A DNA stretch of 64,000 bases from assembly GCA_020891255.1 (NCBI GenBank), contig BQFW01000008.1, positions 2,976,001 to 3,040,000 on the forward strand, read 5' to 3'. The position numbers were made by a program, and so were the translations under genes. Numbering within the stretch: position 1 is the stretch's first letter; each line of letters starts with the position of its first letter. Under the pieces are notes generated by a model. That model had not been told where the DNA came from, did not search any database, and saw nothing but the letters and a program-made list of their open reading frames with translations. Below are positions 17,313-45,546 of the stretch, piece by piece. This DNA comes from Entomortierella parvispora E1425. Lineage: Eukaryota; Fungi; Mortierellomycota.

Positions 17313-18875
17313 CTAATGTATAATGGCTCGCCGATCCAAGGCATCTTGCCACTCGGCCATCTCATCTTCTGCTGTACAAAAGCCAACGACCCTTTTCAGC
17401 CCACGGAATGTCTGGATCAGCCATTCCCAATCGCCACGACTCAGCACCTGTCCGGTGCCCGTCGCACAGAGGACTTGCATCCGCTGCAAGGTGCTGAGAC
17501 TGCGGACACCAGCGCTCTCTCGAAACGTCAAGAAGGGGACACGTTTGTCCAAGAAGCCGCGGAGCGAACCGACATTTAGAACGCGCAGCTGCCTTAGCTG
17601 AGAGAGTTTCTCAAATATGCAACGGTAGTGGTCCTCTAAACGGTCGTCATCGTCCTCCTGCCTCTCGCCCTCCTCGTCAATCACGACAGAGATTGCCCAT
17701 TTTTGAAGTTTTGAACAAGCCCATGGCTTGGAAGACCGCATGACACTCGAGCACATCAACGAGACATCTGTAGTGACCGAGAGGAGGTTGTTGCAGGAAC
17801 AGAGCACGTCTTGGATCATGGAACTCTTTAAACCTTCGCAGAATTCGAACACGATCGTTGTCAAGTTGGAAGCAAAGTTCTGCAGTAGAGTCACATGTCC
17901 CTCCTCGTTCATGGTCGCCTCAGTCAGCATGACGTTTGGAACGCCTCGAGGAAAGGCCTTGAATGTGTTGACCATTGTATCCCCTGCAATATTATGGACA
18001 TCAAGTCTGTCCAAGTTATTCCAGGGAAGTTCAGAGCCAATGATTCCCAAGATTGGCTCAAAGGTTGTTCCCTGCCTCTGTTTCTTTTTCTCAATCATGA
18101 TCCAATCGCCCCAGATTAGGACGCGAAGATCTGCTGAAATCTTCATCAAGTGGCATAATGATTGAAGAGACTCGGCGTCAAAGAAACAGTTCTGACATTC
18201 AATCTTCCTCAAAGTACTCCTATCGTTGTCCTGAAAAGTCGTCCACAGCTCAAGGAGATGAACACTATCCAAACGAAGGGATTGCAGCGTGGAAAACATT
18301 TTGAGCAATGTATCTCCAAGGACATTGCCTACCAGGGATAAGTTTACCAGCTCAACAGTGGAGAGCGCCGCCAAACGAGCTATGCTCTTCCAGAAAACTG
18401 ACGAGTTGTCCTTGAAAGTACGGTGTGCCACTAAAAGAGCCTGGATTCTTGTGCTGTGTCTGCAGAGAAACGCATAGAGCTTTGTCCCCAAGGGGGATTT
18501 TTTTGAAAATGGATATGGACAATCCGACATCTCAATTCTGAGCTCTGTCAAGACCGGAAAGTCCAAGCGGAGGTACGGTGCACAGAAGTGTGTAGATTCC
18601 CAGACTATGCCAAGAGATTGAATCAGGTGCGCGTTGGCCCTCACAGCGTTGAGGGTCGCGTAGGGTGTATCCTGGTCTGGGCCCAGTCTCACAGAGCGCC
18701 AAAAGATCCTCGCAAATACTGCACGAAAACTCTTGTTGACAAAGAGGCACCTGTGAACATCTCGTGGAGACAGATACGTCGAAACTTGCACCAGGATCTC
18801 GGGGACATCCAGAGGGTTATCGGGCGCCAGTCCCGGAACGGAGGTGGGAGGTATCAGTGAAGTAAGGTTCGCCAT
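17313..18875 (-). CDS. F-box/LRR protein, paralog B (520 aa, intronless)
   Basis: Collinear homolog of paralog A: PLDVPEILVQVSTYLSPRDVHRCLFVNKSF, PWACSKLQKWAI, DWEWLIQTFRGL. Confidence 0.9.
   Translation of the reverse strand: MANLTSLIPPTSVPGLAPDNPLDVPEILVQVSTYLSPRDVHRCLFVNKSFRAVFARIFWRSVRLGPDQDTPYATLNAVRANAHLIQSLGIVWESTHFCAPYLRLDFPVLTELRIEMSDCPYPFSKKSPLGTKLYAFLCRHSTRIQALLVAHRTFKDNSSVFWKSIARLAALSTVELVNLSLVGNVLGDTLLKMFSTLQSLRLDSVHLLELWTTFQDNDRSTLRKIECQNCFFDAESLQSLCHLMKISADLRVLIWGDWIMIEKKKQRQGTTFEPILGIIGSELPWNNLDRLDVHNIAGDTMVNTFKAFPRGVPNVMLTEATMNEEGHVTLLQNFASNLTTIVFEFCEGLKSSMIQDVLCSCNNLLSVTTDVSLMCSSVMRSSKPWACSKLQKWAISVVIDEEGERQEDDDDRLEDHYRCIFEKLSQLRQLRVLNVGSLRGFLDKRVPFLTFRESAGVRSLSTLQRMQVLCATGTGQVLSRGDWEWLIQTFRGLKRVVGFCTAEDEMAEWQDALDRRAIIH

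Positions 18876-45546: not shown

What the first reader, a model, noticed from the sequence alone, without database searches (positions are those of the whole stretch)
17313..45546. Repeated head-to-head F-box/LRR <-> NACHT-WD40 (NLR) gene pair: candidate undescribed fungal immune module
Seen: the same divergent arrangement occurs three times. These are 24259-25806(-)/26973-32384(+), 37392-38939(-)/40108-45546(+) (ATG-to-ATG 1166 and 1168 bp), and 17313-18875(-) facing a decayed NACHT-WD relic at 20229-20730(+). The third unit's F-box gene is far more diverged from C/D than C is from D, so the linkage appears to predate the recent duplication. Established: fungal NACHT-WD40 proteins (HET-E/HET-D/NWD2 type) are non-self sensors often encoded next to their partner, plant NLRs work as head-to-head pairs, and F-box proteins such as Arabidopsis CPR1 control NLR turnover via SCF. 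Inference: the F-box/LRR is a co-regulated partner of the NLR, acting as its degrader, its guarded target or its executor. I recognise no HeLo/HET/amyloid death domain on these NLRs, so an adjacent ubiquitin-ligase adaptor is an attractive effector.
Basis: partly seen in the sequence, partly recalled or inferred. Interest (0 to 1): 0.85.

Follow-up and report, generated by a model that had tools for sequence, protein, structure and literature searches.

The report
F-box genes beside fungal NLR genes
In the soil fungus Entomortierella parvispora, genes for F-box/LRR ubiquitin-ligase adaptors sit next to genes for NLR-type immune receptors more often than a rough chance estimate predicts.

Summary
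The genes are real and at the stated coordinates. The window is E. parvispora contig BQFW01000008.1. Pairs C and D are a single ~10.6-kb tandem duplication, patched by gene conversion. The "third pair" is an intact F-box gene facing a ~155-codon NLR fragment.

New support lies just left of the window. There a 515-aa F-box/LRR gene (~25% identical to C) sits head to head, 1149 bp apart, with an intact NLR that is 43-46% identical to C/D. On contig 12, four uncalled F-box/LRR ORFs lie between two further NLR paralogs. In a Benniella-like metagenome fungus, F-box/LRR is the only family recurring beside 79 NLR loci.

Against a dedicated partnership:
- Orientation varies.
- Four of seven NLR regions in this genome have no F-box gene.
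- The three F-box-centred loci I fetched have no NLR.
- F-box A and B stay under purifying selection without an intact NLR.
- The F-box and NLR trees do not mirror each other.
- No shared signalling motif exists, and no RNA data were available.

Best reading: a birth-and-death island of two expanded recognition families copied as units. Direct SCF control of the NLR is possible (~0.3). The scan's other notes list F-box arrays and NLRs separately, never this pairing.

The parts
1..933 (+). 3' part of F-box/LRR gene E. The gene starts 614 bp left of the window (L012 7161-8708). Its head-to-head partner NLR_E (1766 aa, L012 711-6011, minus strand) lies wholly outside the window.
   Evidence: Family HMM E = 7e-44 over the full length. 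Pfam F-box-like 2.5e-4 and LRR_At5g56370 4.6e-5.
1655..2225 (+). Upstream block of F-box A, homologous to the upstream blocks of C and D (78.5% identity, more than the 66% of the coding sequence). Contains the invariant 14-mer at 1692-1705.
2226..3782 (+). F-box/LRR gene A (518 aa), intact, with no NLR beside it. Co-directional with E.
   Evidence: dN/dS 0.25-0.38 against B and C.
17313..18875 (-). F-box/LRR gene B (520 aa), intact.
19181..19194 (+). Invariant 14-mer TTTCGCGACGCGTC, 306-319 bp upstream of the B start codon. The same 14-mer lies at 26254-26267 (C) and 39388-39401 (D).
   Evidence: 4 hits in the window against 0.01 expected. Absent from the other loci.
20301..20766 (+). NLR relic: the pentapeptide-linker segment plus the first WD40 blade (NLR_C residues 1046-1209), with one frameshift/stop. 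It diverges from B. It is annotated in the record as a 133-aa gene.
   Evidence: Its nearest relatives are NLR_C/D at 57% identity, with weak tree support.
21770..32380 (.). Copy 1 of the tandem segmental duplication.
24259..25806 (-). F-box/LRR gene C (515 aa).
   Evidence: AF2 model with pLDDT 86 shows the F-box helices at 25-58 plus an RNI-type LRR. Foldseek hits are COI1, TIR1, FBXL2, ribonuclease inhibitor and the NLRC4 LRR.
25807..26972 (.). Divergent 1166-bp spacer between C and NLR_C. The F-box-proximal 150-500 bp are shared with A and B. The NLR-proximal half is not.
26973..32384 (+). NLR_C (1803 aa). Layout: disordered residues 1-165, ARM solenoid ~170-545, NACHT (Walker A at 648, Walker B at 716), pentapeptide repeats ~1095-1147, then WD40 repeats.
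32937..33661 (-). F-box/LRR relic (C-terminal half, frameshifted). Closest to A at 47% identity.
33783..34030 (.). Tandem repeat of 96-bp period lying between the two duplicated units. Short-read contigs show it at about 20-30 times the depth of the flanks.
34695..45516 (.). Copy 2 of the tandem segmental duplication.
37392..38939 (-). F-box/LRR gene D (515 aa), 96% identical to C. All but one of the differences fall in residues 1-260.
40108..45546 (+). NLR_D (1812 aa). It is 94% identical to NLR_C over residues 1-1100 and 82% overall. The WD40 part has dS 1.1.

Best explanation
This is a birth-and-death gene island, about 255 kb from the end of a 3.3-Mb contig. It is built from two lineage-expanded, intronless families.

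(a) About 515-aa F-box + RNI-type LRR proteins. By fold they are SCF substrate receptors of the FBXL/COI1/TIR1 kind.
(b) About 1800-aa ARM-solenoid-NACHT-pentapeptide-WD40 NLRs. This is the 'NLR_Helical' / N-NACHT type already reported for Mortierellomycetes.

A two-gene unit, F-box(-) and NLR(+) about 1.15 kb apart, was copied in tandem several times: B + NLR relic, C + NLR_C, the F-box relic, and D + NLR_D. Afterwards one or the other gene decayed. The youngest two copies were largely homogenised by gene conversion, except for patches and the WD40 sensor.

Shown: the duplication structure, the protein folds, purifying selection on all intact copies, and recurrent co-location of the two families in this genome and in another Mortierellaceae.

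Inferred: the pair travels as a duplication unit, and the two families share a fast-turnover recognition compartment. They are probably co-inherited and perhaps co-regulated. They are not obligate one-to-one partners, because each gene keeps its own upstream region and each family also thrives alone.
For: - Single tandem duplication with a mosaic of dS from 0 to 1.1 and dN/dS 0.2-0.45.
- Relics of both families inside the array.
- F-box genes form arrays without an NLR: L008 with four in tandem, L009 and L010.
- NLR paralogs of the same young clade sit beside unrelated genes (Crinkler, Cnd2, a gag-like gene, unknowns).
- A and B are intact without an intact NLR.
- The conserved upstream block and its invariant 14-mer are specific to F-box A-D, and A keeps them without an NLR.
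- Orientation of F-box relative to NLR varies: divergent, co-directional upstream, or downstream.
- Three F-box subfamilies flank one NLR clade, and A-E monophyly is rejected at p = 0.019.
- Several of the NLR loci lie near contig ends.
Against: - Co-location looks more frequent than a uniform null. Three of seven NLR regions in E. parvispora carry F-box/LRR ORFs within 10 kb.
- That is about one ORF per 23 kb of NLR flank, against a rough genome average of one per 95-300 kb. The average is estimated from 1161 library-wide representatives, of which 2 of 30 sampled were from this species, and a 38.66-Mb genome.
- In the metagenome fungus, F-box/LRR is the only neighbour family recurring in more than two of 79 NLR loci.
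- The divergent layout with a ~1.15-kb spacer is kept in two pairs whose proteins have diverged to 25% and 45% identity.

These points fit a functional link as well as, or better than, mere shared compartment.
Confidence: 0.5

Rival explanations
1. Dedicated module. The adjacent F-box/LRR protein is the cognate SCF adaptor of the neighbouring NLR. Either it keeps the NLR at a low resting level, as CPR1 does for SNC1 or FBXL2 for NLRP3, or the NLR's ARM N-terminus recruits it as the executor. Side-by-side encoding keeps receptor and regulator co-inherited and co-expressed.
For: - Head-to-head layout and spacer are retained in two deeply diverged pairs.
- The pair is duplicated as a unit.
- Both genes are under purifying selection.
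- Recurrent family co-location occurs in two Mortierellaceae.
- The NLR lacks any recognisable death or enzyme domain.
- There is precedent for F-box control of NLR levels (PMC6032283; PMC8395773).
Against: - Four of seven NLR regions have no F-box gene.
- Seven close NLR paralogs lack a head-to-head partner.
- The three F-box-centred loci fetched lack an NLR.
- A and B are conserved without an intact NLR.
- Orientation is variable.
- The trees are not congruent.
- There is no shared promoter block.
- There is no expression or interaction evidence.
Confidence: 0.3
2. Pure coincidence. Two abundant families happened to land side by side once, and everything else is duplication of that accident.
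For: - C and D are one event.
- The B relic is tiny.
- The F-box family is large: 1161 representatives in the library, and the scan's first-stage notes list several arrays in this genome.
Against: - Pair E uses a different F-box subfamily.
- The contig 12 and contig 5 loci add independent instances.
- An independent genus shows the same neighbour family as the only recurrent one.
- A rough binomial estimate for 3 of 7 regions gives about 0.001-0.02.
Confidence: 0.15
3. Assembly artefact: the 13-kb repeat is a mis-assembled single copy.
For: Long stretches are 100% identical between the units.
Against: - The two NLRs differ by 18% in protein, and their WD40 parts by 20-40% in DNA.
- Short-read contigs match copy 1 from 30400 to 33764 without a difference.
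- The assembly is 409x Nanopore coverage plus polishing.
Confidence: 0.03

Closest known systems
Arabidopsis SCF-CPR1 controlling the NLRs SNC1 and RPS2 (PMC6032283)
   Same: An F-box protein and an NLR. The proposed logic is that an SCF adaptor sets the receptor level.
   Different: CPR1 is not encoded next to its NLR targets and has a different substrate-binding region. Here there is only genomic adjacency and no interaction or turnover data.
Mammalian SCF-FBXL2 degrading NLRP3 (PMC8395773)
   Same: An F-box + LRR adaptor. FBXL2-SKP1 is among the fold matches of F-box C. The target is a NACHT receptor.
   Different: Unlinked genes and an animal inflammasome context. Sequence identity is only ~15%.
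Podospora NWD2/HET-S-type adjacent NLR-effector pairs (amyloid-motif signalling; PMC9815663)
   Same: A fungal NACHT-WD40 NLR encoded beside a candidate partner gene.
   Different: The defining shared short motif between the NLR N-terminus and the neighbour is absent here. The neighbour is an F-box/LRR protein, not a HeLo-type pore-former.
Plant head-to-head sensor/helper NLR pairs (reviewed in PMC12258605)
   Same: Divergent orientation with a ~1-kb shared spacer. The pair is duplicated as a unit.
   Different: The partner is not an NLR. No integrated decoy is present.
'NLR_Helical' N-terminal solenoid NLRs of Mortierellomycetes (PMC9815663) and the 26 N-NACHT NLRs of E. parvispora (PMC12258605)
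   Same: The NLRs here have this architecture: an N-terminus of over 500 aa with an alpha-solenoid, then NACHT and WD40.
   Different: In the parts I searched and read, those papers do not mention F-box neighbours. 'F-box' occurs 0 times in both.

Membership tests
F-box proteins (SCF substrate receptors) | F-box motif of about 45 residues forming a three-helix Skp1-binding module | tested here: met
   Pfam F-box-like scores 24.0-26.5 bits against a cut-off of 24.3, so marginal (B and D pass, C is just under). The AF2 model has helices 25-32, 37-43 and 48-58 at pLDDT 79-89.
F-box proteins (SCF substrate receptors) | Binds Skp1 and assembles into SCF | not testable with these tools
   No complex prediction or experiment was available.
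FBXL class (F-box + leucine-rich repeats) | C-terminal LRR solenoid of alternating strand and helix | tested here: met
   The AF2 model has pTM 0.85 with about 14 strand/helix units. Foldseek matches COI1, TIR1, D3/MAX2, FBXL2 and ribonuclease inhibitor at E 1e-8 to 1e-5. Pfam LRR models hit only gene E.
NLR / STAND NACHT receptors | NACHT NTPase with Walker A and Walker B | tested here: met
   GDSGAGKS(T) and FILICDGYDE are present in NLR_C, D and E. Pfam NACHT scores 22 bits, below its 26.7 cut-off. PF05729 is precomputed for most close paralogs.
NLR / STAND NACHT receptors | Tripartite layout: N-terminal domain, NOD, C-terminal repeats | tested here: met
   ARM_5, NACHT, pentapeptide and at least 11 WD40 repeats.
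Amyloid-signalling NLR/effector gene pairs (NWD2/HET-S type) | Short motif shared by the NLR N-terminus and the adjacent protein | tested here: not met
   Local alignments of NLR residues 1-150/170 against the adjacent F-box score no better than shuffles, p 0.72-0.82, for C, D and E.
Plant-type paired NLRs | Both genes of the head-to-head pair are NLRs | tested here: not met
   The partner is an F-box/LRR protein without a NOD.
Conserved two-gene module (operon-like functional pair) | Pairing conserved across paralogs and species with congruent trees | tested here: not met
   Seven same-genome paralogs lack the head-to-head partner. In the metagenome fungus only 1-2 of 32 loci with enough upstream sequence show a divergent F-box. 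A-E monophyly is rejected at p = 0.019.
Conserved two-gene module (operon-like functional pair) | Co-expression from a shared promoter | not testable with these tools
   No RNA run was listed. RNA-seq DRA013164 exists according to PMC8759367.

The most novel reading that the evidence does not exclude
In Mortierellaceae, F-box/LRR proteins are cognate SCF adaptors (regulators or executors) of ARM-NACHT-WD40 NLRs. They are encoded beside them so that receptor and ubiquitin-ligase arm co-segregate and diversify together. This would be the first NLR-ubiquitin-ligase immune module in fungi, and an NLR output that is neither pore formation nor an enzyme domain.
Probability: 0.25. Interest if true: 0.75.

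Novelty: new variant of a known kind. Interest (0 to 1): 0.5.

Why it matters
Fungal NLRs are numerous, but very few have a known partner or output. The Mortierellomycete ARM-NACHT-WD40 type has no recognisable effector domain. A recurrent neighbour family with a clear biochemical role, SCF substrate recognition, gives a concrete and cheap hypothesis to test on how these receptors are controlled or how they signal.

If the link is only compartmental, the locus is still a clean example of unit duplication, gene conversion and reciprocal decay in a fungal recognition-gene island.

Tried and rejected
- Word-indexed homolog searches with F-box C and with a 26-sequence family alignment found only the window's own genes. 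They gave no census of the family.
- No RNA runs were listed, so co-expression could not be tested.
- The idea that divergence islands in the C/D copies reflect positive selection was rejected. dN/dS is 0.25-0.45 inside the islands and dS rises with dN, which indicates mosaic ancestry or gene conversion.
- The idea that NLR plus a downstream F-box were co-duplicated between contig 12 and contig 5 was rejected. There is no DNA similarity, and the two F-box genes join only as long branches.
- A shared bidirectional promoter was rejected. The conserved block is F-box-specific, and NLR upstream regions share only 20-40-bp scraps.
- An amyloid-type shared motif was rejected.
- The sigma-70 promoter scan was not used because it does not apply to a fungus.
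Full report
WHERE THIS IS. F-box B and F-box A are encoded on NCBI assembly GCA_020891255.1 (Entomortierella parvispora E1425), contig BQFW01000008.1 (3,295,400 bp). Record position equals window position plus 2,976,000. 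The genome is 38.66 Mb in 19 contigs with 11,641 predicted CDS (PMC8759367). It follows that the E. parvispora proteins found as the nearest NLR relatives (P0005-P0011, P0017, P0024) are paralogs in the same genome. That allows a within-genome test.

OBSERVATION. The five ORFs exist as described, and the spacers between start codons are 1166 and 1168 bp. The 515-520-aa ORFs hit Pfam F-box-like at residues 25-63, around the gathering threshold. The long ORFs carry ARM_5 (residues 226-400), NACHT, pentapeptide repeats and at least 11 WD40 repeats. F-box A, B and C are about 50% identical to each other, and C and D are 96% identical.

Pairs C and D are not independent. Positions 21770-32380 and 34695-45516 form one tandem segmental duplication, with 91.5% identity over 9.95 kb and a period of about 13.13 kb.

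The third unit is F-box B facing a fragment at 20301-20766. That fragment matches only NLR_C residues 1046-1209 and has one frameshift/stop. In a 157-column tree its nearest relatives are NLR_C/D at 57% identity, but no branch is well supported.

I also found a frameshifted F-box relic at 32937-33661(-), closest to A. Read left to right, the array is therefore: F-box(-)/NLR relic(+), F-box(-)/NLR(+), F-box relic(-), F-box(-)/NLR(+). Short-read contigs of the same sample match 30400-33764 exactly and show a high-copy repeat at 33.6-34.2 kb.

WHAT THE PROTEINS ARE. An AlphaFold2 model of F-box C (26-sequence alignment, pLDDT 85.9, pTM 0.85) has three F-box helices followed by about 14 strand/helix LRR units. 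Foldseek matches COI1, TIR1, D3/MAX2, FBXL2-SKP1, ribonuclease inhibitor and the LRR of NLRC4.

The NLR N-terminus (residues 1-640; pLDDT 66 overall, above 85 in the core) is disordered to about residue 165. It is then an all-helical solenoid that matches importin-alpha, designed ARM proteins and the SARM1 ARM domain only weakly. Walker A (GDSGAGKST) and Walker B (FILICDGYDE) are intact in NLR_C, D and E.

This architecture corresponds to two published descriptions. One is the 'NLR_Helical' N-terminal solenoid reported for Mortierellomycete NLRs, with homologs in Mycoavidus (PMC9815663). The other is the N-NACHT NLRs, of which E. parvispora is reported to have 26 (PMC12258605).

SELECTION AND MOSAIC. 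Identity between the two duplicated units runs from 100% down to 60-80%. It is 100% over 22.6-25.0 kb and 25.8-26.6 kb. It drops to 86-97% in patches covering the first 260 codons of the F-box gene, the stretch 26.63-26.83 kb, and NLR codons 351-420. It is 60-80% in the WD40 region.

dS ranges from 0 to 1.1, while dN/dS stays at 0.23-0.45 (0.72 on very few changes in NLR residues 1-350). This is the signature of gene conversion and mosaic ancestry under purifying selection, not of positive selection. A/B/C comparisons give dN/dS 0.25-0.38. So A and B are maintained although A has no NLR beside it and B's neighbour has decayed.

A FOURTH, DEEPLY DIVERGED PAIR JUST OUTSIDE THE WINDOW. The locus around F-box A (L012) shows the following, immediately left of the window:
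- An intact 1766-aa ARM-NACHT-WD40 gene on the minus strand, NLR_E, 43-46% identical to NLR_C/D.
- An intact 515-aa gene on the plus strand, E, with 1149 bp between the two start codons.
- Window ORF 100-933 is the 3' part of E.

E is only about 25% identical to C. However, it matches a 20-sequence family HMM over its full length (E = 7e-44), and it hits Pfam F-box-like and an F-box-associated LRR model. This is better evidence than the B relic that the divergent layout is old.

OTHER NLR PARALOGS IN THE GENOME. For P0005-P0011 I fetched 10 kb on each side. None has a head-to-head F-box of the A-D subfamily. Their divergent neighbours are a 257-aa unknown, nothing called within 5 kb, a Crinkler gene, Cnd2, a gag-like gene, a 90-aa ORF and a 173-aa ORF.

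A six-frame HMM scan nevertheless found intact but unannotated F-box/LRR ORFs:
- Four lie in the 18.6 kb between NLRs EMPS_08503 and EMPS_08507 on contig 12. Two are co-directional with each NLR.
- One lies downstream of EMPS_08503.
- One lies downstream of EMPS_03850 on contig 5.
- L001, L003, L004 and L006 have none.

So 3 of 7 independent NLR regions (6 of 10 intact NLR genes) have a family member within 10 kb, in varying orientation.

F-BOX-CENTRED VIEW. An exhaustive profile search gave 1161 representatives at E <= 1e-3, and only 7 at E <= 1e-30. The nearest relatives outside the window are about 25% identical. They are EMPS_02777, EMPS_08490 and a four-gene tandem array in Gryganskiella. 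None of these has NLR sequence within its contig or within 10 kb. The scan's first-stage notes, which are unverified, list several further F-box/LRR arrays in this genome.

TREES. Using residues 200-1090, NLR_C/D nest in a young E. parvispora clade with P0005-P0010 (support 100). NLR_E is the basal member of an 11-sequence clade (support 96). In the F-box tree, A-D form one clade (100). E falls in another clade with proteins of other genera (97, on a long branch). The contig 12 copies form a third clade (100). Forcing A-E together costs 27 log-likelihood units (AU p = 0.019; the group was named after seeing the tree). The pairs are therefore not simple co-duplicates of one ancestral pair. Either partners were exchanged, or the juxtaposition arose more than once.

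ANOTHER MORTIERELLACEAE. A metagenome scan with the NLR N-terminal alignment returned 79 loci. Of these, 77 come from one sample, whose NLRs are 59-79% identical to Benniella and Mortierella sp. proteins. F-box/LRR ORFs occur in 5 loci:
- L022 is divergent upstream, with about 2 kb between start codons.
- L020 is divergent upstream, about 4.5 kb away.
- L023 and L089 are downstream.
- L042 has copies on both sides.

Among 159 flank ORFs of at least 150 aa, this is the only family recurring in more than two loci. One caveat is that ORF-based detection favours intronless genes.

HOW UNUSUAL IS THE CO-LOCATION? This is a rough estimate only.
- Of 30 representatives whose source I looked up, 2 were E. 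parvispora.
- That implies about 80 annotated copies, with an upper bound near 255.
- Allowing for unannotated copies gives about 130, with an upper bound near 400. That is one per 95-300 kb.
- NLR flanks hold one per 23 kb in E. parvispora (6 ORFs in 140 kb) and one per 32 kb in the metagenome (8 ORFs in 256 kb).
- Counting regions rather than genes, 3 of 7 has a binomial probability of about 0.001-0.02 under a uniform null.
- This does not control for both families preferring the same distal, duplication-prone compartments. Several of the NLR loci lie within a few hundred kb of contig ends.

REGULATORY DNA. The upstream regions of A, B, C and D share a block 100-570 bp from the F-box start codon. 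A versus C is 78.5% identical there, more than the 66% of the coding sequence. The block contains an invariant TTTCGCGACGCGTC that occurs exactly four times in the window (expected 0.01) and in none of the other loci. The NLR-proximal half of the spacer is not shared with A, B or E. NLR upstream regions share only 20-40-bp scraps. Each gene therefore seems to bring its own control region.

KNOWN-SYSTEM CHECKS.
- No short motif is shared between the NLR N-terminus and the adjacent F-box protein (p 0.72-0.82 against shuffles). The amyloid-pair criterion fails.
- The plant paired-NLR criterion fails, because the partner is not an NLR.
- F-box control of NLR abundance is established for CPR1 with SNC1/RPS2 (PMC6032283) and FBXL2 with NLRP3 (PMC8395773). 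In neither case are the genes linked.
- Full-text searches found no paper linking F-box genes to fungal NLR loci. 'F-box' occurs 0 times in the two fungal NLR surveys.

VERDICT. The sequence observation is real but over-counted. It is loose in geometry, not obligatory for either family, and without expression or interaction evidence.

I rate the explanations as follows:
- 0.5: a shared birth-and-death recognition island in which the pair is a duplication unit.
- 0.3: a dedicated SCF-NLR module.
- 0.15: coincidence.
- 0.03: assembly artefact.

Noticed in passing
window 1692-1705, 19181-19194, 26254-26267, 39388-39401: An invariant 14-mer, TTTCGCGACGCGTC, lies 306-534 bp upstream of each of F-box A-D. 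From my own knowledge it looks like an MluI-box/E2F-type site. It sits inside an upstream block that is more conserved than the coding sequence. It may be a shared cis-regulatory element of this subfamily.
   Followed up: partly
window 33600-34200: The tandem repeat between the two duplicated units has about 20-30 times the depth of its flanks in short-read contigs, so it is a dispersed or satellite repeat in this genome.
   Followed up: no
L002 4837-6528 and 6943-8466; L007 1181-2689 and 4167-5690 (contig BQFW01000012.1, about 387-400 kb): Four intact F-box/LRR ORFs of about 500 aa, lying between two NLR genes, are not called as genes in the public annotation.
   Followed up: partly
L003 5710-8565(-): An 879-aa Crinkler-domain gene lies head to head with NLR paralog EMPS_10671, about 32 kb from the contig end. 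This is another candidate NLR neighbour family.
   Followed up: no
L004 16576-20911(-): A 1290-aa gene with a Cas12f1-like TNB domain (TnpB/Fanzor-like) lies next to a histone gene and NLR paralog EMPS_00085. A retrotransposon pol gene is at the locus edge.
   Followed up: no
loci L015-L091 (metagenome sample Ga0247824): One metagenome holds at least 77 distinct contigs that each carry an ARM-NACHT NLR of this type (434 confirmed stretches in the whole collection). This indicates a very large expansion in a Benniella-like fungus.
   Followed up: partly
window 15100-17029(+): A Kelch beta-propeller gene (Beta-prop_FBX42-type hits) lies tail to tail with F-box B. A similar Kelch gene lies near F-box EMPS_08490 on contig 12 (L010 20194-21582).
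   Followed up: no
window 60568-62121(-) and 62481-63923(-): Two adjacent paralogs, 32% identical over 336 aa. The second carries a 3CxxC zinc-ribbon domain.
   Followed up: no
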